63,975 bases of DNA from Octopus bimaculoides (lineage: Eukaryota), in the NCBI RefSeq assembly GCF_001194135.2, contig NC_068989.1:76763189-76827163 (forward strand), in the 5' to 3' direction. Below the pieces are notes generated by a model. That model worked only from the letters and a program-made list of their open reading frames with translations, was not told where the DNA came from and made no database searches. The position numbers and the translations under genes were made by a program. This document shows positions 3,176 to 61,820 of this stretch, piece by piece. Positions within the stretch are counted from its first letter, which is position 1. The number at the start of each line of letters is the position of its first letter.

Positions 3176-3514
3176 GTATGGTCTCATTCTTTAAAACAAA
3201 AGGAGACACATTTAATATAATCAAGGAATATCTGAAAACAATTATTTATTCCTGAAAATACAAGTTATTTTCTAGAATATTTAGTCAGAGGCGTTTTACA
3301 TGAATATTAATTGATTTACAATGACAGAAGAGATATAAATTTACCTGATCTAGTATGAAAATATTCAAATCTTGCAAAATACTAGTAAATTATCATCTCA
3401 TGAAATTTGCGTATAATAGTCAAGATAAGCTAACTGTATGAGTATATATATAACACCAAATATACAGTGCGTGTGTTTTTATTGGCTAAACTGGCAATAT
3501 GACCATCCCCAAGT

Positions 3515-3551
<37 letters not shown>

Positions 3552-4066
3552 NNNNNNNNNNNNNNNNNNNNNNNNNNNNNNNNNNNNNNNNNNNNNNNNN
3601 NNNNNNNNNNNNNNNNNNNNNNNNNNNNNNNNNNNNNNNNNNNNNNNNNNNNNNNNNNNNNNNNNNNNNNNNNNNNNNNNNNNNNNNNNNNNNNNNNNNN
3701 NNNNNNNNNNNNNNNNNNNNNNNNNNNNNNNNNNNNNNNNNNNNNNNNNNNNNNNNNNNNNNNNNNNNNNNNNNNNNNNNNNNNNNNNATATATATATAT
3801 ATGCAGTTAGCCTGTCTTGTCTATTATACACACATTTCATGAGACGATAATTTACAAGTATTCTGCAAGATTCGAATATTTCCATACTTGATGAGGTAAA
3901 TTTATATCTTTTCTGTCATTGTAAGTCAATTAATATTCATGTAAAACGCCTCTGGCTAAATATTCTAGTGAATAACTTGTCTTTGCAGGATTAAATAATT
4001 GTTTTCAGATATTCCTTGATTATATTAAATGTTTCTTCTTTTGTTTTAAAGAATGAGACCTTATAC
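3176..4066. mobile_element. Foldback / long-TIR element with ~260-bp inverted arms
   Basis: 3176-3440 is the reverse complement of ~3800-4066, roughly 85-90% identical by eye. The centre holds a short unique stretch, (AT)n and an N gap. Confidence 0.8.
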
Positions 4067-5333: not shown

Positions 5334-7487
5334 ATACAGATACACACACACACACACAAGGCCTCACATCCTCTCAATGTATACTAAATTTATCAGAATT
5401 CTAGCTTCGAAAATAAAAGAATGTCCCCATAACTCCTCTTTTTCTATGGTCATGTGTCCGATAAAATGAAGAATCGACTAAATTTGCGTGTATTGAAGTG
5501 TGTGACGCTTGGGTCGTGCCAGGATATTCGAAACGCATGTATAGGAGCACTTTGAATATAAAACGGAGCGATAACTGTGGCAAGCGTGAAATTTCATGCA
5601 ACGGAAGTCGAACCATAACAACTATGTCACGTGATTTCGGTGTGTCTTGCGCCTCATCAGCAATGAATGCTTGCCAACTCAGCAAGCCTTGTTATCGGGA
5701 ACCAACGACGCTGGTCACTGGTGTCGCTAAGAACCGGCGAGCGTCGGTACATGTCAAATGTGGAAGTATTCGAAAGACATGTTTCACACGGGTTGCACGT
5801 ATATTGTATTCCTATAGTCTTTCATCAATCATTATTTTACAACATATAAGAAATTTCTATACGGTTTACAGTGAAATTAACGTTATATCTCTTCTATTAT
5901 CAATTCTAATTGCTGTACAATTGGCTTTTAGAAGAATTCATCAATACGTTTTCTTTCTTATTTACCTGAAGATCTAACATTATTGTGAAAAAAATCATTT
6001 GTGATAAACAGCTAAAATTAAATATGTATAAGTTTTGTTTCTCTCCAGGAAATGTTTTGAAATATTTTATTCACTAATTTTCATTCATTTTTTATTACCT
6101 GCTGATGTTTTATTCTCTGGTTATCCGAAAGATAAATTCCAAAACTTCTGTTACTATTTTAATCACGTCAACTATATCTTTTATTATTCTTATGGCACGA
6201 TATTTTTTTAATTTTTGCTTTATATGTCTTTTCCGGAAAGTATTCATTGAAGGTTTTATTATAACATTATTTTTATATTTTCTTTGGTTTTATTTCTCTT
6301 CTTGCAGAAAAAAAATAACATCCTTTCAGTAATTCCTAGAATCAAACAACTGAGTCTTCCGTATGACTAAAGTTTCAAGATATTATTTATTTTGCATAAA
6401 CCGGTGAGTTGATAATCATAGGTTGAACTATAAAAAAATATATGCATTATTATAATAATATTTTAAATGAAAATATGGTTTAGATTATCAAATACATTAA
6501 TTTCAATAAATGAGAAGTAAATCAAGAGTGACTAATACCTCGCAGTAGCTCAGGATTCTGCAGGTCTATCTAATGCATTTTTACAAAGACCAGTACCTGA
6601 CAGAAATAGCAAATTAAGAAAGTAAGAAAGTACAGAAAGTCAACATTTATTTGGAACATGTACTATATGTTATAAAATTCACGAGTGAATGAATTGAAGA
6701 AATTGAAAGTCCAAGAAAATTCACAAGGCATTATTCAATTTTTGATACAAAAATAATTTATTTTACAATTTCGAAACGAACGCTGAACCGAGTGTATAGA
6801 AAGGATGATGCGGCTGCTGCTGTGAACGTTAATCTAAAATATTTGCTGAAGGACGTATGTAGCAAGATTTGACATTACAATATATTTTTTAACTGTGGAA
6901 CGTTATCGGCTGTAGAATGAATAATAACTCAATAAAAAGGTCGTGCAACGTTGATACACACATTGATGAAGAAGCATTGGAGGAAAACAGTGACTGTAAA
7001 AAAAAAACAAAAAAACAACAACATTATCTTGAAACTGGTTAGAAGGAGTGGAATAACATTTCTGTAACCATATTAAAGAGCCGCTGCGGCTTTCTACGTC
7101 GCGACATTTCAGAATTTGTTATAACTATAATAATTGTTTTTTCAGGTATATTTGCAAGTATTGTGAGTGGTGTTAAATCAACCAAATCTTCATGTTGGTA
7201 GTCAATAAAAGTGAACGTTGTTGTTCGTTTAAAGTCCAGGCCACAAGTAAACTTTCAATACAATATTGGTGTGTGTGTATGTGGGGGTGGGGGTGGGGGA
7301 AGTTACATACCTAAACTAAGACACACAAACACATTAACACACATTTAAAGCCTATCTCTGTCCCCGCCTGTGCATGTCTCTGTCTTTAGATGTGTGTGTG
7401 TATGTGTGTCAGCGAATACACGCATATATATATATATATATATGTATATATATGTGTGTGTGTATATATATATATCTNNNNNNNNNN

Positions 7488-11451: not shown

Positions 11452-11455
11452 CTAT

Positions 11456-11518
11456 ATTATTTACATTATTTACATTTGACGGATATTATTTACATTTGAC
11501 GGATACATTTGACGGATA
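11456..11518 (-). repeat. Stub of the hammerhead-element tail with internal reiteration
   Basis: ATTATTTACATTATTTACATTTGACGGAT matches the arm ends at 21385 and 41262. ACATTTGACGGAT occurs three times in tandem. Confidence 0.65.
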
Positions 11519-11524
11519 GAACTG

Positions 11525-20617: not shown

Positions 20618-21440
20618 ATATCTACGGCTATACTGCGTTCGAAATATTACTTTCTTGTCTGTAAAATACAAAACACATTCGACGCTTCCAGTCTTTGTTT
20701 ATAAAATGTTATTGAATTATATATCACAGTATTAAATTATCACGAATTGCTGGCTGGTAGAATAATAGAGTGTATGGCTGTTGAAACACTAATCTCTCAT
20801 AGAAAATCTTCGTATAAACTTCAGATTGATGACAAGTTTAGTGGCCACCCACTGTACACGTAATTAAGCATTTCTTAGAGTATTTCTTTAACCAGAGAAA
20901 TCCAGTCTCCTTCGTTATCTGATGTGTGCTAACTGTTCATTATCAAAAGTAAATTAATCGTTAGGGATGCCGGTAATATAACCTAATTAAGCTAATCTGT
21001 ATAAAAGCTTGTCCAGTTTTAGTATTGAATGCAAGTAAGACGGTAAAGTTTGTAGCAAGATATAATTAAATCCCGGTCAGGATGAGTGAGGATTGAACTT
21101 CATACACTCAATTACTGGTAAGCTGTCATATCAATATCAGGAACCAATGATACACAGCGTATTAAATGCTACCCTATTCAAAACTAGATTTTGCGTATGG
21201 ATGACGAAAGGGTCAAGAGAGAAAGAAGCTAGTTGGTCAGTCCTTACAGAAAATATGACTTTCAGACCTCTTTTAATTGTCTAGAGTTAATGGTTTATAA
21301 TCAGCAAAAGAGATAATGTAACACAGCTCAACCACTTGCGGATATTATGTGAATAAGCTGAATTATACCAGTTGCTACTAAAGGACATTATTTACATTAA
21401 TTACATTCGACGGATATTTGTCCTCATCTTGTTTGTTGTT

Positions 21441-21486
21441 AACTCAACGTTTCGGCTGATGTACCCTCCAGCCTTCTTCAGGTGTC
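21441..21486 (-). ncRNA. Minimal type I hammerhead ribozyme motif, copy A (core intact, one stem I mismatch)
   Basis: GACAC CUGAAGA A GGCUG-gagggtacat-CAGCC GAAA CG UU GAGUU. Confidence 0.65.
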
Positions 21487-21634
21487 TTCGGGAAATTTCG
21501 AACCTGGGTTAAGAGCGCGGGCTACTAACCCCAAGATTCCGAGTTCGATTCCAAGCAGTGACCTGAACACTAATAAAGATAATAACATCGAAAAATACCT
21601 TAGGAATGAGAACCCAGGGTCGAAATTTCCCCAA

Positions 21635-21680
21635 GACACCTGAAGAAGGCTGGAGAGTATATCAGCGGAAATGTTGTGTT
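21635..21680 (+). ncRNA. Hammerhead motif, copy B (degenerate)
   Basis: GACAC CUGAAGA A GGCUG-gagagtatat-CAGCG GAAA UG UU GUGUU. The stem II closing pair and the stem III palindrome are broken. Confidence 0.5.
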
Positions 21681-23965
21681 AACAACAAACAAGATGAGTA
21701 CAAATATCCGTCGAATGTAAATAATGTAAATAATGTAAGTAATGTACAGAATTCCTCATCTCTTAAATATAGAACTGTGCTACTAAAGGAGTCAAAAATA
21801 TCATTTCTCTACACCACTGTGTTTATTAACGAGAAGATTAAATGAAAAATATTTTCCACCATACTTTTTCCTTCGTCATGGATTTGCACCAAGTTAAAAG
21901 TTCACAACGATCTTCATTACACTGAAAAAAGTAAAATCTGTCAATCTGCTTTTGATCATCCCAAGCCTGCTTTTTGTGTGCCCGGTCAATCGCCTTAACT
22001 GACGTTAACGTTTATTATTTAGTTTTATCATTGGCTGCGTGTTTGGGAAACAACGTATTGGGGGCCGGACTGCGTGGAGCCTTTCAAAATCAGTCTTACG
22101 ACACATTAAATGTTGTGATATGGTCGAAGGAACACGTTCATGAAGACACTGGAGTATTGGGACAAAATTGTAGATATTCATCGTACTACAATTCCGTCAA
22201 TTAAATTAATGAAGCAAAGAAAATAGCTCCTTACTGTCCTTAATATTAACTAGAAATATCTCAGGAACGTAGTAGACGTTAAAAGAATATAAATCTACTC
22301 GTCTTTTCCAGCCAATGAATTCATGGATAAGGCGTTCCCTTTGCAGCTAGAGTGCTACCAGCCTGGAAAACGCTATGTGACACAATAGACAGGTATATTC
22401 TATCATAACGTTTGGTTGAGCGGTGTGTGCCCGCTGTGTGTCTGCCCATCTCTCTCGTAAGTACAAACACAAACACACGCACGCACACACGCACACACAC
22501 ACACACATAGACACACACTCACACACACACATACACACACACACACACTCTCTCTCTATCTCTCTCTCTCTCACACACACACATACACACAAACACACAC
22601 ACCCGACAGACCCCTATGTCTATATAATATATTCTGTGATAGTGATATTCATTGTGCATAAAAAAAAATAAAACTCACTGATTGTACTTCATAGTTATTT
22701 ATTTGGTTGATTGACAAATGCCTTTCGCAATATTCTGCAAGTTTTCAAAGAATTTTCTTGAGGCGTAGATACACATACATATTTAGAAACAAATATACGC
22801 ATACGAAGGCTAATACACACATACTATATATGTATGCCTCTGAGTTTCTGTGTGAGTGTTTATGGGCAGGTCAGTTACGTGTGTATTTATGTATGTGTGA
22901 TTTAAAAACAGATTACTTATTCATAGTAACTCAAACAAACAAAATCTTTACGAATGAGACTATAATGCATTCTAAGATCATATTATAACAAATTCTATAC
23001 ATTCCTAACACTGTTCCATTTGAACTTATGAACAAAAACAAAATAGAGCAAATGCAAGAAGGAACGGATATAAAGTACCTGTGACATTCGCAGAAATTAA
23101 ACGAAAAACGTTGTTGTTACCTCATATTATTTGTAAAGTTTAATATTTCTGTGTGAGCTTTTTAATGTTTGGTTATATGAAATTAATTTCCAGATACACC
23201 AGCAATACTTATCAACTTTCGGTTCTTATATTTGGATGAAGTGATTGGTGATAGCCTGTCTTTACCAATATATTTCATTATCAGCGCTGATTCCGCTGTT
23301 GGGGGATGTTATCGACACTAAGACTTTTGAGCATTAGTATTTTGCTTCCCAATTCAGAAAGTGTTTTATTTTATTTTTGCTAACAAGCCAATGCTGTTTA
23401 TATTTATTTTCACATTCTGCTCGTATATCAGCATTGCTTCTATACCTAGTATCTTATTTCTCTAGCGAATTATGTATAGGCTTAAGCGTATCTAGTTTCA
23501 TTTATGTCCATGTCATTTCATGGCATTATGAACGTTCCTTGTTTCCAATATCTAGTGACCTGTAGTATATTTATAAATGGCATAAAAATTGGGATCGTCA
23601 AGTACCAAACCTTTGCGATTGCAATCAAATTTGTGCGTAATATTGGTCATTACAAACGTCCTAGGTGCGTTATTAGCGTGGAACTTTGTTATAAGTAGAA
23701 CTATTTTAAGGTTGCTCTTTGAAAAAAAATATTATTGTTGCTGTTATATGTTCAATGTATTTTCGCCCCTTTCAGACATTTAAAAAAAATTATTTATTAG
23801 TTCTTGAGTCACGAAGAATTTGATTCAGGCAAGAATGTTTTAATGATCTGTGTTTAGTAGTAGCACCTCAGCCGCGTTTTGCAAATAGGTATTTAAGAGT
23901 AAATTACATCGTCAGATACATATGCATTTATATATAATACATAAATATATACAAGTATATTTGTA

Positions 23966-40548: not shown

Positions 40549-41322
40549 NNNNNNNNNNNNNNNNNNNNNNNNNNNATATATATCTCAATAATAATGATAG
40601 TTTCTTATTAGGAACAATAGTGTTAATAGGACTGCAAAAGAAGTGTTGAAATAAATGAGACGACTATAACAAACTTTGGTTTTGTTCTACAACCAAAGTT
40701 TGTTATACTCATCTCATTTATGGTCATCCAACTAATATATCACATCTCGAACATTGAATCACAAATAAAGAAACATAATGCTTTTTATAGAATACGGATG
40801 CACAAAATCACAGCAGATGAAACAATACTTCATTTAGACAGGCATATATATATAAATGTATACCTGAATATAGAAATATATATATATGTGCGTGCGACTA
40901 TTTTCCAACATATAGGTAAATCCCTAGAGAAACAATACAGCATATTTTAATGTATTCGAATGTGAATCGTGGTAAGCGTTTTCTTATTTAAATGCAGAAA
41001 TGAGAGACAAATCGCTATAGTGACGTAACTTTGTTTAATTTGGAAATTCGGTGAAAAGCGATCCATAAAATGAATTTTAGACTGTATCAAATAAATTAAA
41101 ACCATTGAACACGGTGCTACAGCATAACGGTCGCTCCATAACGAAAAACTGCCGAAAATCCATTCAGAAGAGAGTTGAACCCAAAACGTAAATAGCGTAT
41201 CGATCACGGAGTTGGAGAAGAGATACAGTTCTATACTTAAGAGATGAGGAATTATGTACACTATTTACATTATTTACATTATTCCCAATTGATGAATACT
41301 TGTCTTCATCTTGTTTGTTGTT

Positions 41323-41368
41323 AACACAACGTTTCGGCTGATATACCCTCCAGCCTTCTTCAGGTGTA
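41323..41368 (-). ncRNA. Minimal type I hammerhead ribozyme motif, copy C (best preserved)
   Basis: UACAC CUGAAGA A GGCUG-gagggtatat-CAGCC GAAA CG UU GUGUU. The core is intact, with a 4-bp stem I, a 5-bp stem II and a palindromic ACGU stem III. Confidence 0.72.
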
Positions 41369-41458
41369 TTGGGGAAATTTCGAACCTGGGTTCTCATTGC
41401 TAATGTATTTTTCGAAAAATAACTTAGGAATGTGAACCCAGGTTCGAACTTTCCCCAA

Positions 41459-41504
41459 TACACCTGATGAAGGCTGGAGGGTATATCAACCGGAACGTTG
41501 TGTT
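41459..41504 (+). ncRNA. Hammerhead motif, copy D (degenerate)
   Basis: UACAC CUGAUGA A GGCUG-gagggtatat-CAACC GGAA CG UU GUGUU. GAAA is mutated to GGAA. Confidence 0.5.
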
Positions 41505-42187
41505 AACAACAAACAAAATGAGGACAATTATACGTCAAATGTAAATAATGTAAATAGTGTTGGAGAAGATATGTTGTTATTTTTTTTATTATCTTGATTT
41601 ATTTTTAATCCTACACATATTTCACTTGAGACAATAAAAAGTAAAGAATATTGTCAAAAGTTTGTAAAATTATGACTACAGAAAGGTGGTTAAGCAGTTG
41701 ATTTATGCTCGACCACTCCGTAAAATATATTGCTCGGATGACTACAGTTATGGGTTAACTAAAATGCTATGAGTGGCATTTTGGAGAGAGTATATATCAT
41801 CTATAGATGAGATCCAGAGGTTCCTAGTATAGAAGACACTTGGTAGTGCTCAAAAGATTCCAAATTAGACCCCGAGGTCTTTACAAGGGATCTACTCCGC
41901 AAAGTAAAGAATGGTTGTAAGAGGGATCAAGTTGAGCAGATAGAGAGGCAATTATGAGGATAACAAATAGATACATATATTTAATTTATATAATGTATCT
42001 AATTTATTTATCTACATAAGCGGCTCTCTTTATACACACACATACACGCACAGACATATATGTATGCGTATGTGTGTGTGTATAGTACAGTTGCGGCCGT
42101 ATGGTAAGAATTTGAAATCGGAAAGTAGAGACTCGGAAGCAATACAGGTATGAACGGTTCCCCAGCTAGATTATATCAAAAGTAATA

Positions 42188-47443: not shown

Positions 47444-47619
47444 GGAAATCGGAATAGAGTGCTCAATATAGTTGTCACAAAAGGTTTTCCTCCTCAGTTA
47501 GTCGACAAGAACAGATAGCATGGCACCGTAGGTTGCAGGCATTAGGCCCGCTACGCATCCTAAACCCCAGGAGTTACAAAAAAGCCTGAGTTGAAAAGAA
47601 TAAGTAATGATGACGATGT

Positions 47620-47677
<58 letters not shown>

Positions 47678-47680
<3 letters not shown>

Positions 47681-48025
47681 AAGAGAAACAAATACTGTCA
47701 GCTCATTGATGTAGCCATATCAAATGACATGAATTTTCTGAGTAAAGAGGTTGAAAAAATCACCAAGTACTCCGAATTGAAAGTGGAAATGGCAAGACTG
47801 TATGGAATGCGAGAGGGTAATGTGAAAATGATACCAGCCGTAATCGGAGCGTTGGGCTCAATCCCATTGAATCTTCATGTCTTCTTAAGGCAACTGGAAA
47901 TTCCATGCAAGATTGATGTCTTGCAAAAAGCAGACTTATTGGGCACAGCGCATATCTAAAGGAAAGTATTATCTGTTTGATATCCTTGTTGTGACTTGCA
48001 TTTTTACCCACACTGTGTTACGAAG
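47678..48025 (+). mobile_element. R4/Dong-type LINE restriction-like endonuclease (RLE) C-terminus plus 3' UTR
   Basis: DKRNKYCQLIDVAISND...EKITKYSELKVEMARLY...IPAVIGALGSIP...LQKADLLGTAHI*RKVLSV*. Confidence 0.9.
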
Positions 48026-48857: not shown

Positions 48858-49020
48858 TCGAATGTGGAATCTAAAAACAGAAACAATTCCTATCATAGTA
48901 GGTGCCTTAGGTATAATAAAAAAATATTCAGACAAATACATAACAAAAATAGCAGGACTTACAAATATATATAACATACAGAAAATTGCACTACTGGGTA
49001 CTGCACACATCCTACGCAAA
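48858..49020 (+). mobile_element. R4/Dong-type RLE C-terminus (second subfamily), cut by a gap
   Basis: RMWNLKTETIPIIVGALGIIKKYSDKYITKIAGLTNIYNIQKIALLGTAHILRK. Confidence 0.9.
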
Positions 49021-56329: not shown

Positions 56330-57020
56330 GATGATCACTCACCACGAGGAGCTGCATGCACTCTAACATTTCCTTGACCTTCGATCCAACACCCAACGTG
56401 ACGCATCCACACTCCTTCGTCTGGCCGAACTTGTCCTCTCACTTAACTGCTTCTCGTTCGCGGGTGATTTTTACCGGGTGTCAGGAGTGGCCATGGGAAC
56501 GAGAATGAGCCTCAACTATGCGAACCTCTTCGTTGGCTACGTTGAGGCCCAAATATTCTCAAGTTTCACTGGTCCCACTCCTGAACTATACGGTCGTTAT
56601 ATTGACGGCTGTATCGTTGTGATTTCCCTCTCCCGTGAACATCTAGACTCTTTACTCTATTTTGTCAAGTCTTTCCATCCTGCCTCCATTTCTCCTGTAC
56701 TATTACCGACACCTCAGTCGGCTTTCTCAACATTTCGGACAACATTCATCATTCCACTCTCACCTCATCCATCCACTACAAGCATACAGACTCACACTCA
56801 TACCTCATCTTCTCCTCCTCCCACCCTAAACAAATCAAGCTCTCCATCCCCTATTCCCAATTCCTCCGTCTACGCAGGCTCTGCAGTGACAACCATGACT
56901 TTGAGACTCAGTCTTAACTCATGGCTCGCCACTTTATCCAATGTGGATATCTGCTCACCACTATCCACACCGCCCTTGCCAGAGCACGTTCCGTGGATCG
57001 TGCATCTGCTCTCTCCCATA
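56330..57020 (+). mobile_element. Penelope-like element RT fragment (GC-rich, distinct lineage)
   Basis: LLRLAELVLSLNCFSF..FYR..SGVAMGTRM..NYANLFVG...YGRYIDG...HYKHTDSHSYL.FSSSHP...SIPYSQFLRLRRLCSD. Confidence 0.92.
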
Positions 57021-58884
57021 CATATAAGAACATATGTATAGGAAAATACATATAGGAACATATGTATATGTGTGCGCGCGCATATGTATGTGTAATAGTT
57101 GTTTATATATTTTTACAGTGAAATTTCTCTAGCAAACGTTCGAATCACCTGCATGTTGAAACCGGAATGTGAATGTCACATTTTATGATATACAATTTAT
57201 ATATTGTCTATTTCATATTTTGCATACAGTTCTACATTTGACAGAGTGTATTCACTGTATAGCACCTAGCATGTTAAATACAGCATTGCCACCCGTTTAT
57301 ATAGAAACACACGCACAAAAGCACACACACACTAACACACATGCACACACTACACACACACAACGAATACACATGCACACTGGAAGCACACACACCCACA
57401 CAAACCGCACGCACATAGATACTGCCCACACACCCAGCACACACACATAAACACTGCCACTCGTATATACACACGTACACACATATATATGTGTATACAT
57501 ATACATGTATATATTCATATATAAATTAAGCTTAACCCGTGATGTATGTAAGAAATGAAAATAAAATCAATGTTTAAATAAAATATAACTGAAACCAATC
57601 ATTATACAAGCTGAAAGTTCATGAAATTTCTCACAGACAACTCCAAAATAATTTTCTTTTCCTCAGTCGTTAAACAGTACTTTTCTCCATTCGGATTGCA
57701 TCTGTTTATTCGTTTCAATACAACCATGAACAAAAAGGTACTTCAGTGTCAGACATAAATTTTATATCTCACAAAGCTGCAGTGTCGAACAATGGATTGC
57801 ACAAAAAATTATTGTATACAACGTAGAGAATAATGCGTATCTCATACGAAACAATATATAATGGTGCTATTATATACACAGAAAACAACTTCACCAAGTA
57901 TTCCAATATTCACAAGAAAGTTGATATATGTGACAGTAAAAGACAAAACAGCATAAAACATACGAAGATTACATTAATTGTGCAAGTGCATTTGTATGTC
58001 TATTTGAATATTTGCACATCAGCAATATTCGTTTCAATCATATGCATACAATCACAAACTCATAATTTTACAATCTGGAAATTATGCTGTGATGATAAAT
58101 ATTATTGGTACGTCTAATTTACATTTAACCTAGACGCCTTCTTTAAATTTCCTATTATTTTAAAGTATTTCTTGATATATTTATATATCTTTCCGAAAAT
58201 GAAATTTTTGCACACCTATACACCTTTGCAAAGAAGTATTTAACAACGTATTGGTTTTGCTCTTCTTCTTTATCATTTTTCCTTTACGTTTTAATATTTC
58301 ATGTTATTGACTTTATTTTCAATGTAACGCCTTTGTTGTCTTCCATATGAGTCCATTGTTATTACTTTCATCTTGAGGTAATTAGACAAACGTTAAGTCA
58401 AATTACGTACATACATATACATATACACACATATGTATATAATGTAATATGCACGTGCACACAAACAAACACACGTCACCCCACACACATGCATATGTAT
58501 ATATATATATATATATATNNNNNNNNNNNNNNNNNNNNNNNNNNNNNNNNNNNNNNNNNNNNNNNNNNNNNNNNNNNNNNNNNNNNNNNNNNNNNNNNNN
58601 NNNNNNNNNNNNNNNNNNNNNNNNNNNNNNNNNNNNNNNNNNNNNNNNNNNNNNNNNNNNNNNNNNNNNNNNNNNNNNNNNNNNNNNNNNNNNNNNNNNN
58701 NNNNNNNNNNNNNNNNNNNNNNNNNNNNNNNNNNNNNNNNNNNNNNNNNNNNNNNNNNNNNNNNNNNNNNNNNNNNNNNNNNNNNNNNNNNNNNNNNNNN
58801 NNNNNNNNNNNNNNNNNNNNNNNNNNNNNNNNNNNNNNNNNNNNNNNNNNNNNNNNNNNNNNNNNNNNNNNNNNNNNNNNNNNN

Positions 58885-60198
58885 GTTCCTCATTTGTTGT
58901 CTCTGGACTCGTGAGCGTCCTGATACATTCCCTGTGGATCAAATTTCTGCTTTAGCAGTTCATATCTGCATTTGCGAAAATCTGTCCATTTGTTGTGCTA
59001 ATGGATCTACCCGTATGCATGTATTGACACGTCCCACATCTGTTATCATTAAACTTGGATACTGTGAAAGATTTCTTCTGTTTGTTCATCGAATTTCTGT
59101 TCGCTGAATTTTGCCTTTATTAATAGTTTCTTTAGGCTATGTGTTTGCCGTTTACGTAAGATAAGTGTTTGATTAGCTATTATGTCTTTTTTTTTTAAAG
59201 TTTCGCTTTGTTTTATGATTGGCAAATTTGTTTCATGATGTTAAAAATGTTGTAGTAGTGCGGACTGTGTGTTACTAGAAATGGCATTGTGTTCTCTTGA
59301 TGGGTTTGTCTTTTTTGTGTTGCCCTAATTTGTTCTATCGGTATTTGTTTTGCTCGCTGTATGCTAGTTTCTATAAAGTACGAGTGGGTAATTTTGCTTT
59401 AGCAGAAATCCTTTGATTTCTATAAGTCGTGTGTCTCTGGTATTTGTATCATCGACTATAATATAAATTTTCCTGGCTACACATTACGGGATGTTGCGTT
59501 TTGTGTGTACTGGGTGGCATTATTTGAAATTTAGGTACCGGTGTATGTCTGTGCTTTTGTAAGAAATATCAGTTGTGATTGTGGTATTGTTTTTATCATT
59601 ATGTCAAGAAATGGCAAATGTGTGTTGCTCATTTCTCTTGTGAATTTGAGACTGGGGTGTAGATTATTGAGGATGGTGCTGAATTCTTCCAGATTTTCTA
59701 TGGATTTGGTTCAAATTAGGAAACAATCATCTAGGTATCTTTTTTACGTGTCATCTATTTGTCTTTTAAAGGTTATACTGTTGTTCTCTTCTATTGTTTT
59801 AATACAGGTTTTGTTCCACTTCTCCCAATACTGAGTTCGCGAAAACTGGAGCAAATCGCATACCCATAGCTATGCCTTGAATTTGGAGGTAGATTTTCCC
59901 CGTTGAAAAGGAATGTATTGTTTTCGAGGATGAAGGTTATAGTAAATCTACTGGTGATCGCTTCTCTATGTTTCTCGGCCCAATATTTTATGGCAGTAAG
60001 TCCCAAATCATGTGGAATGTTTGTATATATGTTTGATACATCAAAGCTAACTAACAATGAATGAGGTTCTGTTACTTTGGGCAGCTGTGACAGGAAATCA
60101 ATGTAATCTCGAATGAAACTGTATACGTGACTACATAGCGGTTTTAAGATAATGTCAAGGGTGTTGCTCAGACGATGTGAAGGGCAGACTAAGAGCAT
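58885..60198 (-). mobile_element. Penelope-like element: RT, thumb and linker towards the GIY-YIG endonuclease, decayed
   Basis: HRLSNTLDIILKP...SFDVSNIYTNIPH...GIAMGMRFAPVFAN...LDIMI...YLNF..CHP.HTK.NIP... followed by RCGTCQYMHTG..MNC*SRNLI, the Cys linker preceding GIY-YIG. Confidence 0.92.
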
Positions 60199-61590: not shown

Positions 61591-61820
61591 AATGGGCGTG
61601 GTCTAGTAGTTGGGCTGCTGCGATCACGATTGCTAGATCCTGTGTTCGATTCCCTGCCTGGGCAGCGCGTTTTGTTCTTGTTCACGTTGCTCCAGTCCCC
61701 ATTTTGATCAGGGGAAAATGTTGACCTGCTCACTTAGCCAGCATCGTCATCTGAAGGCTAAAACAATGCAAAACGCATTGTAACACATCTGCTAACCTGG
61801 TCGGTCATGTTGTCATCTGA
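61591..61820 (+). mobile_element. tRNA-derived SINE, internally shortened CORE-like copy
   Basis: GCGTGGTCTAGTAGTT (A box), GTGTTCGATTCC (B box) and TTGCTCCAGTCC. The tail AAAACAATGCAAAACGCATTGTAAC is related to ~36020-36080. Confidence 0.65.

What the first reader, a model, noticed from the sequence alone, without database searches (positions are those of the whole stretch)
41323..41368. Intact minimal hammerhead ribozyme in a short non-coding repeat (four copies in the window)
Seen in sequence: the minus strand folds as a type I hammerhead with stem I ACAC/GUGU, core CUGAAGA, one extra A, stem II GGCUG/CAGCC, GAAA, and stem III reduced to the palindrome ACGU. Predicted cleavage is after GUU. 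Homologues lie at 21441-21486 (-), 21635-21680 (+) and 41459-41504 (+). The copies differ at the freely variable core position N7 (CUGAAGA vs CUGAUGA). Established knowledge: Penelope-like elements carry minimal hammerheads whose palindromic stem III is stabilised by dimerisation, and an extra A between A9 and G10.1 is tolerated in the chrysanthemum chlorotic mottle viroid hammerhead. Inference: this is a ribozyme-bearing non-autonomous retroelement family that is probably abundant in this genome. I do not know whether it has been described.
Basis: partly seen in the sequence, partly recalled or inferred. Interest (0 to 1): 0.85.

Follow-up and report, generated by a model that had tools for sequence, protein, structure and literature searches.

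The report
Penelope-type minimal hammerhead in octopus repeat
The hammerhead ribozyme motif is really there, but it is the already-described "minimal hammerhead" that Penelope-like retrotransposons carry, sitting in two decayed head-to-head insertions in what is probably an octopus genome, so it is a new example of a known thing rather than a new kind of element.

Summary
The minus strand of 41324-41367 reads ACAC-CUGAAGA-A-GGCUGG(8-nt loop)UCAGCC-GAA-ACGU-U|GUGU, a complete type I minimal hammerhead. A strict descriptor expects 0.0025 such hits per shuffled window.

The "four copies" are the two arms of two insertions of one repeat. Only one arm is intact. The other three carry private mutations, including A13G and C11.1G. 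The majority consensus of the four arms is the intact ribozyme.

Each insertion has three parts: an inverted 5'-truncated copy, a direct copy, and a 42-43-nt tail at one end only. The flanking target-site duplications are 12 and 13-14 bp. This is the published insertion signature of Penelope-like elements (PLEs).

The motif also has every feature that defines PLE min-HHRs:
- helix I of 4 bp
- a long helix II
- an unpaired nucleotide between A9 and G10.1
- a G10.1-C11.1 pair
- a palindromic 15.2-16.2

PLE reverse-transcriptase relics lie in the same window. A peptide translated from the repeat matches an Octopus bimaculoides protein model.

Verdict: a new member of a known kind (Cervera and de la Peña 2014). 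The copies here are probably inactive relics. Three questions are untested: whether the source is a short non-autonomous element, how abundant the repeat is, and whether it cleaves.

The parts
41324..41367 (-). Intact min-HHR. Helix I is ACAC/GUGU. The core is CUGAAGA, followed by a bulged A. Helix II is GGCUGG/UCAGCC with an 8-nt loop. Then GAA, helix III palindrome ACGU, and U17. Predicted cleavage is between 41328 and 41327.
41225..41266 (-). 42-nt tail of insertion A. It is present at this end only and ends ...ATAGAACTGT.
   Evidence: PLE tail as described in PMC8557442 and PMC11167929
41267..41413 (-). Direct copy (arm) of insertion A. It carries the intact HHR.
   Evidence: (I15)
41414..41558 (+). 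Inverted 5'-truncated copy (arm) of insertion A. It is 88% complementary to the direct arm. The palindrome centre is at TTCG|AA. The HHR remnant at 41460-41503 has A13>G, U7 and helix II CAACC.
41211..41224 (.). Target-site duplication of insertion A, left copy: GTTGGAGAAGAGAT. The right copy is GTTGGAGAAGATAT at 41559-41572 (13/14 match).
41559..41572 (.). Target-site duplication of insertion A, right copy.
21386..21510 (-). Inverted 5'-truncated copy (arm) of insertion B, with no tail. The HHR remnant at 21442-21485 has a helix I A:A mismatch.
   Evidence: (I18)
21511..21587 (+). Centre of insertion B. It is 77 nt, absent from A, and contains GGTTAAGAGCGCG...GAGTTCGATTCC, which looks tRNA-like by eye only. 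It is either upstream sequence of the source element or filler. The junction shows GGTT microhomology.
   Evidence: not recognised by ARAGORN or the Rfam tRNA model
21588..21735 (+). Direct copy (arm) of insertion B. The HHR remnant at 21636-21679 has C11.1>G and ACGU>AUGU.
21736..21778 (+). 43-nt tail of insertion B, largely identical to the tail of A.
21374..21385 (.). Target-site duplication of insertion B: GCTACTAAAGGA. It repeats perfectly at 21779-21790.
21779..21790 (.). Target-site duplication of insertion B, right copy.
11453..11524 (+). Third, vestigial insertion inside a (TA)n microsatellite. About 30 nt of the outer end of the inverted arm is partly reiterated and joined to the last 7-10 nt of the tail (..GGATAGAACTGT). 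It has no HHR.

Best explanation
The motif is a genuine Penelope-type minimal hammerhead (min-HHR). It belongs to the 3'-terminal (pLTR) module of a Penelope-like retroelement family in an octopus genome.

The two loci are independent, old insertions made by the PLE RT/GIY-YIG machinery. Both strands of a staggered target cut (12-14 bp) primed reverse transcription of the same RNA variant. Priming started from two internal start sites about 42 nt apart. Both cDNAs were 5'-truncated and then joined. The result is an inverted copy, a direct copy and a one-sided tail.

In the source element, two sense copies of the ribozyme occur on one multimeric or tandem transcript. They would pair through the ACGU palindrome to form a double hammerhead and cut after GUU, which trims the element RNA.

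The genomic copies here are relics. Each transcript would carry only one sense ribozyme, buried in a hairpin of about -200 kcal/mol. Three of the four copies are mutated.

Shown: the motif, the insertion architecture, the target-site duplications, the intact consensus and the PLE relics nearby. Inferred: the insertion mechanism, dimeric cleavage and the role in RNA processing.
For: (1) Every non-descriptor trait listed for metazoan PLE min-HHRs is present. Helix I is 4 bp. Helix II is 6 bp. There is an unpaired A between A9 and G10.1, a G10.1-C11.1 pair and a palindromic C15.2-G16.2 (against PMC4209133). That paper also reports dual min-HHRs 100-700 bp apart on opposite strands.

(2) The architecture matches PLE insertions as described in PMC8557442 and PMC11167929. 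There is an adjacent inverted 5'-truncated copy. There is a 42-43-nt tail at one end only, in all three insertions and always on the direct copy. The target-site duplications are 12 and 13-14 bp.

(3) In the four-arm alignment the diagnostic sites group by insertion (columns 48 and 126, partly 117 and 121). None group by arm type. Both arms of an insertion therefore came from one single-arm template, not from a palindromic master.

(4) All eight substitutions in the HHR are singletons, and the consensus is the intact ribozyme.

(5) Chance expectation is 0.0025 per window.

(6) PLE RT relics lie in the same window at 58952-60198(-) and 56478-57041(+). Of 10 full-length relatives of the former, 8 carry a C-terminal GIY-YIG domain and 7 hit RVT_1.

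(7) Octopus genomes are reported to hold many PLE families (PMC13282606). An octopus-assembly contig with a PLE RT ORF also carries a min-HHR-like motif (L005).
Against: - No RT/GIY-YIG ORF adjoins either insertion, and no autonomous element with this 3' end was found. The link to PLEs therefore rests on architecture and motif class.
- The PLE relics in the window have no detectable HHR and share no sequence with the repeat.
- Rfam hammerhead models do not score the motif.
- The fold energy is ordinary (z = -0.81).
- The predicted double hammerhead (-19.7 kcal/mol) is no more stable than two monomers (-21.4).
- Published min-HHRs cleave poorly in vitro, and the anole PLE does not need its HHR for insertion in vitro. 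The processing role is therefore weakly founded.
- With four arms there is no covariation evidence.
Confidence: 0.8

Rival explanations
1. The source is not a truncated autonomous PLE. It is a dedicated short non-autonomous element of roughly 200-290 nt, possibly with a tRNA-related head, that carries the min-HHR and borrows PLE enzymes. It would be a PLE-dependent SINE or retrozyme-like parasite analogous to schistosome Sm-alpha. This refines the best explanation rather than excluding it.
For: - Both arms of A stop at the same nucleotide, the palindrome centre TTCGAA. A run-off at a defined RNA 5' end would produce that.
- The direct copy of B is preceded by a segment with D-loop-like and T-loop-like strings and a B-box-like AGTTCGATTCC.
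- The arms contain GGTTCGAAA.
- No ORF remnant flanks any of the three insertions.
- Animal retrozymes have been argued to derive from PLE pLTRs (bioRxiv 10.64898/2026.07.22.740005).
Against: - The equal arm lengths in A are also explained by snap-back at the TTCGAA palindrome.
- The 5' boundary of B cannot be judged independently, because A has nothing beyond its centre to compare with.
- The tRNA-like piece is not recognised by ARAGORN or by the Rfam tRNA model even at E<=10.
- No further copies were available.
Confidence: 0.3
2. It is a metazoan non-LTR retrozyme. That would be a tandemly repeated 170-400-bp unit whose canonical type I hammerhead cuts multimeric transcripts into monomers, which are then ligated into circRNAs.
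For: It has a type I hammerhead, low GC, target-site duplications longer than 4 bp, and occurs in a mollusc (PMC7229834).
Against: - There is no head-to-tail tandem anywhere in the window. The copies are head-to-head.
- Helix I is 4 bp, with no loop 1 / loop 2 architecture.
- The termini do not coincide with the cleavage site. The direct copies extend 47 nt upstream and 98 nt downstream of it.
Confidence: 0.05
3. It is a foldback or MITE-type DNA transposon, or a hairpin RNA gene such as a miRNA precursor. On this reading the hammerhead-like string is a coincidence.
For: - The inverted repeats are 126-147 nt long.
- Rfam long-hairpin miRNA models match at E = 1e-16, although far below their gathering scores.
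- The predicted hairpin is about -200 kcal/mol.
Against: - The target-site duplications differ in length (12 against 13-14 bp), and one end carries a 42-nt unique tail, so the termini are not symmetric.
- The arms have decayed to 88-93% without compensatory maintenance.
- Chance expectation of the motif is 0.0025 per 64 kb. The motif also has the extra, non-required PLE min-HHR traits.
- The miRNA scores are 79 against gathering cut-offs of 200-230.
Confidence: 0.05

Closest known systems
Minimal hammerhead ribozymes (min-HHR) of metazoan Penelope-like elements (Cervera and de la Peña 2014, PMC4209133)
   Same: - Type I topology
- Helix I of 4-5 bp without a defined loop 1
- A longer-than-canonical helix II
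- One unpaired nucleotide between A9 and G10.1
- A G10.1-C11.1 pair
- No real helix III, with palindromic 15.2-16.2 implying a dimeric active form
- Occurrence as opposite-strand pairs a few hundred bp apart and as scattered, degenerate single copies
   Different: - This particular sequence family and host (octopus) were not found in the literature I could search.
- Helix II is 6 bp rather than the 7-8 bp of the schistosome families.
- No adjoining PLE ORF was seen.
PLE insertion architecture: pLTR, inverted 5'-truncated copy and one-sided 30-40-bp tail (Craig et al. 2021, PMC8557442; Frangieh et al. 2024, PMC11167929)
   Same: An inverted 5'-truncated copy abuts a direct copy. The tail is present at one end only. 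The target-site duplication is variable. One vestigial copy lies inside (TA)n.
   Different: Both copies are very short (125-147 nt), so nothing but the 3' module is left. The tail is 42-43 nt, slightly longer than the quoted range.
Schistosome Sm-alpha SINE-like elements and metazoan non-LTR retrozymes (Ferbeyre et al. 1998; Cervera and de la Peña 2020, PMC7229834)
   Same: All are short non-coding retroelements that carry a type I hammerhead working as a dimer. They are probably mobilised by PLEs.
   Different: Those carry canonical hammerheads (helix I of 6 bp, helix II of 4 bp, loop-loop contacts) and occur as head-to-tail tandems that give circRNAs. Here the motif is the minimal variant and the arrangement is head-to-head.
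CChMVd (+) hammerhead with an extra A between A9 and G10.1 (De la Peña and Flores 2001; cited in PMC4209133)
   Same: It has an extra unpaired nucleotide at the same core position, and this is compatible with catalysis.
   Different: It is a viroid type III hammerhead with stable helices and is unrelated in origin.

Membership tests
Hammerhead ribozyme (catalytic motif) | Invariant core C3 U4 G5 A6 N7 G8 A9 / G12 A13 A14 / A15.1-U16.1 / H17 not G | tested here: met
   All are present in 41324-41367(-) and in the four-arm consensus. 21442-21485(-) keeps this core and is broken only in helix I. One copy has A13>G, and another has C11.1>G and ACGU>AUGU, which lie outside this core.
Hammerhead ribozyme (catalytic motif) | Helices I and II flanking the core | tested here: met
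   Helix I is 4 bp. Helix II is 5 Watson-Crick pairs plus one G-U. The MFE structure equals this fold.
Hammerhead ribozyme (catalytic motif) | Stable helix III in the monomer | tested here: not met
   Only the ACGU palindrome is present, so helix III can form only between two copies. The double-hammerhead energy is -19.7 kcal/mol against -21.4 for two monomers.
Hammerhead ribozyme (catalytic motif) | Match to Rfam Hammerhead_1, Hammerhead_3, HH9, HH10 or Hammerhead_II covariance models | tested here: not met
   No hit at gathering score in the window, and none at E<=10 in the two loci. These models were not built for min-HHRs.
Hammerhead ribozyme (catalytic motif) | Site-specific self-cleavage giving 2',3'-cyclic phosphate and 5'-OH ends | not testable with these tools
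   This needs in vitro transcription or RNA end mapping.
PLE min-HHR (Cervera and de la Peña 2014) | [quoted passage not shown] | tested here: met
   The A is present in all four copies.
PLE min-HHR (Cervera and de la Peña 2014) | G10.1-C11.1 closing pair | tested here: met
   G-C in three of four copies and in the consensus.
PLE min-HHR (Cervera and de la Peña 2014) | Palindromic 15.2-16.2 (and loop 3 if present) | tested here: met
   C15.2-G16.2 gives ACGU. One copy has decayed to AUGU through a CpG>TpG change.
PLE min-HHR (Cervera and de la Peña 2014) | Short helix I (4-5 bp) and enlarged helix II | tested here: met
   Helix I is 4 bp and helix II is 6 bp.
PLE min-HHR (Cervera and de la Peña 2014) | Location in the pLTR of an element encoding RT and GIY-YIG | tested here: inconclusive
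   No ORF adjoins the insertions. PLE RT relics lie 15-19 kb away but share no sequence with the repeat.
PLE min-HHR (Cervera and de la Peña 2014) | Genome-wide consensus families with compensatory changes in the helices | not testable with these tools
   Only four arms were available, and no octopus genome could be searched by DNA. Pattern scans of metagenome and viral contigs found nothing.
Penelope-like element insertion | Inverted 5'-truncated copy adjacent to a direct copy | tested here: met
   Arms of 125-147 nt, 88-93% complementary, in both insertions.
Penelope-like element insertion | 30-40-bp tail present at one end only | tested here: met
   A 42-43-nt extension on the direct copy only, in A, B and the vestigial copy at 11453-11524.
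Penelope-like element insertion | Target-site duplication of variable length | tested here: met
   12/12 bp for B and 13/14 bp for A.
Metazoan non-LTR retrozyme | Head-to-tail tandem repeats of a 170-400-bp unit with canonical type I HHR (helix I 6 bp, helix II 4 bp, loop 1 / loop 2 contacts) | tested here: not met
   No direct tandem. The arrangement is head-to-head, and helix I is 4 bp with no loop 1.
MITE / foldback DNA transposon | Fixed-length target-site duplication and symmetric terminal inverted repeats | tested here: not met
   Target-site duplications of 12 against 13-14 bp. One end carries a unique 42-nt tail.
tRNA-derived SINE (Sm-alpha-like) | tRNA-related head with pol III A and B boxes | tested here: inconclusive
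   A B-box-like AGTTCGATTCC at 21542-21552 (one mismatch) and GGTTCGAAA in the arms. There are no ARAGORN or Rfam tRNA matches.

The most novel reading that the evidence does not exclude
The repeat is a dedicated, short, PLE-dependent non-autonomous retroelement of octopuses. It would be a hammerhead-bearing SINE-like parasite with a tRNA-related head. Its obligate head-to-head insertion mode seeds the genome with 125-150-bp perfect hairpins. When transcribed (one copy is already exonised in the dystrobrevin-beta model XP_052825882.1), these hairpins would act as dsRNA substrates. They could feed A-to-I editing or small-RNA pathways in an animal known for extensive RNA editing.
Probability: 0.2. 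Interest if true: 0.5.

Novelty: new member of a known kind. Interest (0 to 1): 0.3.

Why it matters
The finding adds a cephalopod example to the class of minimal hammerheads carried by Penelope-like elements. It gives three compact natural insertions that each show the full PLE signature in under 400 bp: inverted copy, direct copy, one-sided tail and target-site duplication. In all three, the tail sits on the direct copy. That fits the two-start-site, both-strands-primed model proposed from in vitro work on the anole element. Such insertions could be used to test that model genome-wide.

It does not open a new question about ribozymes. The biological role of min-HHRs remains as uncertain as before.

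Tried and rejected
- Rfam at gathering score on the whole window, and at E<=10 on both loci, gave no hammerhead. Only long-hairpin miRNA models matched, far below their cut-offs.
- Exact-pattern scans with the HHR core plus helix II, and with the conserved downstream block, found nothing. I scanned metagenome contigs twice and viral contigs once.
- Protein-word searches with the window's RT fragment, with a spurious ORF across the repeat and with a LINE-type ORF were meant to fish out octopus contigs. They gave one octopus hit, XP_052825882.1. Its 132-kb gene range was too long for the DNA to be returned.
- Seven loci were fetched through RT relatives, from mussel-type assemblies, metagenomes and one octopus-assembly contig. 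None holds a copy of the repeat.
- Pfam and PDB sequence searches of the window's RT fragments themselves gave nothing. Classification came only through full-length relatives.
- The tRNA-like look of the centre of insertion B was not confirmed by ARAGORN or the Rfam tRNA model.
- I first read the shared 5' boundary of the A and B direct copies as evidence for a short template RNA. I rejected this because A has no sequence beyond its palindrome centre with which B could be compared.
- The sigma-70 promoter scan is irrelevant to a eukaryote and was ignored.

Full report
**What the window is.** The window is a draft eukaryotic scaffold. It has 21 N gaps (5,461 N), about 34% GC, and is dense in TA, CA, CT and AAT microsatellites. 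It holds no tRNA gene and no Rfam family at gathering score. A 23-residue peptide translated from the repeat under study is 91% identical to residues 10-32 of XP_052825882.1, 'dystrobrevin beta isoform X1 [Octopus bimaculoides]'. The host is therefore probably an octopus. The exact species is not established.

**The observation.** The minus strand of 41324-41367 reads ACAC / CUGAAGA / A / GGCUGG-AGGGUAUA-UCAGCC / GAA / ACGU / U | GUGU. It has all invariant hammerhead nucleotides, G10.1-C11.1, A15.1 and U16.1, and H17=U. Helix I is 4 bp. Helix II is 6 bp (5 Watson-Crick pairs plus one G-U). Helix III is reduced to the self-complementary ACGU. Predicted cleavage falls between 41328 and 41327 on the minus strand.

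The MFE fold of the isolated 55-mer is exactly helices I and II around an open junction (-11.2 kcal/mol). That energy is ordinary for its composition (z = -0.81).

A strict descriptor of my own finds this single site in the window. It hit once in 400 dinucleotide-preserving shuffles, a mean of 0.0025 per window. The same descriptor finds tandem hammerheads in mussel-type PLE loci fetched later, so it works. At genome scale, roughly a hundred chance hits could still be expected, so the context matters.

**What the four copies are.** They are the two arms of two insertions of one repeat.

- Insertion B spans 21386-21778. It is flanked by a perfect 12-bp duplication, GCTACTAAAGGA (21374-21385 and 21779-21790).
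- Insertion A spans 41225-41558 in the opposite orientation. It is flanked by GTTGGAGAAGAGAT and GTTGGAGAAGATAT, a 13/14 match.

Each insertion is a long inverted repeat with arms of 125-147 nt that are 88-93% complementary. Each also has a 42-43-nt unique extension...GTACAnAATTCCTCATCTCTTAAnTATAGAACTGT, at one end only. The sense strand of the hammerhead points outward in both arms.

Insertion A is a palindrome right through its centre (TTCG|AA). Insertion B has a shorter inverted arm and 77 extra central nucleotides.

A third, vestigial insertion lies inside a (TA)n tract at 11453-11524. It consists of about 30 nt of the outer end of the inverted arm, partly reiterated, joined to the last 7-10 nt of the tail. 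In all three insertions the tail is on the direct copy and the inverted copy lacks it.

**State of the ribozyme copies.** In the four-arm alignment, 8 of 44 hammerhead columns vary, against 16 of 81 flanking columns (Fisher p = 1). The copies are therefore decaying neutrally.

All eight changes are singletons:
- N7 A>U
- two changes in loop II
- G11.3>A
- C11.1>G
- A13>G
- C15.2>U
- one helix I U>A

The majority consensus equals the intact copy at 41324-41367. Pairwise identities are 88-93% in a star-like pattern.

Sites that distinguish the insertions group by insertion (columns 48 and 126 fully, 117 and 121 partly). None group by arm type. This argues that the two arms of each insertion were copied from one single-arm RNA variant at the time of insertion, not inherited from a palindromic master copy.

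A read-through transcript of either insertion is predicted to fold into a hairpin of about -200 kcal/mol that buries the ribozyme. It would also contain only one sense copy. The genomic copies seen here are therefore unlikely to cleave.

**Comparison with what is known.** Cervera and de la Peña (2014; PMC4209133) defined 'min-HHRs' in the pseudo-LTRs of metazoan Penelope-like elements. Their traits are:
- helix I of 4-5 bp with no clear loop 1
- an enlarged helix II
- a conserved G10.1-C11.1 pair
- a palindromic 15.2-16.2 that implies a dimeric active form

They found thousands of heterogeneous copies per genome, mostly as single truncated elements. They also found pairs 100-700 bp apart on opposite strands. 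The motif here meets each of these traits.

Craig et al. (2021; PMC8557442) describe PLE insertions as highly 5'-truncated. These often have an inverted 5'-truncated copy abutting the unit and a 30-40-bp tail at one end only. Frangieh et al. (2024; PMC11167929) showed that a purified PLE protein cleaves and extends both target strands. They also showed that it starts reverse transcription at two internal sites whose spacing corresponds to the tail. The loci here reproduce that signature in miniature.

By contrast, metazoan non-LTR retrozymes are head-to-tail tandems with canonical type I hammerheads (PMC7229834), which is not what is seen. A MITE or foldback transposon would have fixed-length duplications and symmetric ends, which is also not seen.

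**PLEs in the neighbourhood.** The window holds RT relics on both strands.

On the minus strand there are three pieces:
- 59791-60198, with ...LVSFDVSNIYTNIPH...
- 59744-59854, with ..RQIDD..
- 58952-59089, a CxxC linker running into an N gap

On the plus strand there is one piece: 56478-57041, with GVAMGT...YGRYIDG.

Pfam and PDB searches of the fragments themselves gave nothing. An exhaustive HMMER search with the first fragment found 1,892 relatives. Of 10 full-length relatives (698-817 aa), 8 carry a C-terminal GIY-YIG domain and 7 hit RVT_1, which is the canonical EN+ PLE architecture.

These relics share no sequence with the repeat and have no hammerhead nearby. They show that PLEs lived in this genome, not that they are the parents of the repeat.

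A contig from assembly GCA_006345805.1, which I recall to be Octopus sinensis, carries a PLE RT ORF. On the same strand, 3.8 kb downstream, it has a different min-HHR-like motif with the helix III palindrome ACUGCAGU (L005). Published repeat annotation reports dozens of PLE families in O. vulgaris (PMC13282606). I found no paper describing hammerheads in octopus.

**What remains open.**
- Whether the source RNA is a full-length PLE or a short non-autonomous derivative. The equal arms of A could reflect run-off at a defined 5' end or snap-back at the TTCGAA palindrome. The extra centre of B looks tRNA-like by eye, but neither ARAGORN nor the Rfam tRNA model recognises it.
- How abundant the family is. 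No octopus genome could be searched by DNA with these tools, and 12.8 kb of another octopus assembly held no copy.
- Whether the consensus cleaves. Published min-HHRs cleave weakly and only as dimers or with an extended helix III. The anole PLE does not need its hammerhead for insertion in vitro.

**Verdict.** The sequence observation is correct and not due to chance. The interpretation as a ribozyme-bearing retroelement related to Penelope-like elements is right in kind. The element is a new member of a class described in 2014, and the copies in this window are mostly dead relics. Interest is modest.

Noticed in passing
window 56478-57041 (+) and 58952-60198 (-): These are relics of Penelope-like element reverse transcriptases on both strands, interrupted by frameshifts and N gaps. 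Full-length relatives of the minus-strand fragment carry RVT_1 plus a C-terminal GIY-YIG domain. No hammerhead core lies nearby, and there is no sequence similarity to the repeat under study.
   Followed up: yes
window 3177-3451 / 3789-4063: A second, unrelated head-to-head inverted repeat. Its arms are 275 nt and 90% complementary. Its centre is (TA)n plus an N gap. The outer ends read GGTCTCATTCTTTAAAACAAAAGG.... It has no hammerhead core. It may be another PLE-type or foldback insertion.
   Followed up: partly
window 11453-11524: A vestigial insertion of the same repeat inside a (TA)n microsatellite. It contains only the two termini of the element, with short reiterations (TTATTTACATTTGACGGATA). 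This fits abortive double priming and the microsatellite bias reported for some PLEs.
   Followed up: partly
window 21511-21587: The centre of insertion B has strings resembling a tRNA D-loop (GGTTAAGAGCGCG) and T-loop (GAGTTCGATTCC). It joins the truncated inverted arm through GGTT microhomology. ARAGORN and the Rfam tRNA model do not call it. It is either upstream sequence of the source element or filler from template switching.
   Followed up: partly
XP_052825882.1 (Octopus bimaculoides, assembly GCA_001194135.2); compare window 41267-41370 (-): The first ~33 residues of this 'dystrobrevin beta isoform X1' model (MPMGIWHSGEGWRVYQPKCCVNNKQDEDKYPSK...) are a translation of the hammerhead-sense strand of another copy of the repeat. 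At least one copy therefore appears to be transcribed and annotated as a coding first exon. The R>C difference corresponds to ACGU>AUGU.
   Followed up: partly
L005 10639-10698 (+) (GCA_006345805.1, contig VCDQ01011892.1): A min-HHR-like motif of a different sequence family. Helix I is 5 bp, the core is CUGAUGA, helix II is 5 bp with a 21-nt loop, and GAAA is followed by the CUGCAG palindrome and UA. It lies 3.8 kb downstream of a PLE RT ORF (5983-6825) on the same strand. It ends about 165 nt before a (TA)n tract.
   Followed up: partly
window 61595-61670 (+): A SINE-like head follows a (CA)n tract. By eye it has A-box-like and B-box-like strings (GGGCGTGGTCTAGTAGTTGGG...TGTTCGATTCCCTGCCTGGGCA). 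The Rfam tRNA model does not match it.
   Followed up: partly
window 47591-47959 (+) and 48862-49020 (+): Two ORF fragments share a C-terminal motif (..IPxxxGALG...LLGTAHI[LRK]) that I recall from invertebrate non-LTR retrotransposons. They are embedded in (AAT)n/(GAT)n tracts. Their homologues in the protein collection are unnamed.
   Followed up: partly
L003 376-419, 13387-13430, 13963-14006; L007 47041-47794: Mussel-type assemblies fetched through RT relatives carry hammerheads next to or inside PLE gene models, including head-to-tail tandems of 355 nt and 576 nt. I used them only as a positive control for the descriptor.
   Followed up: no
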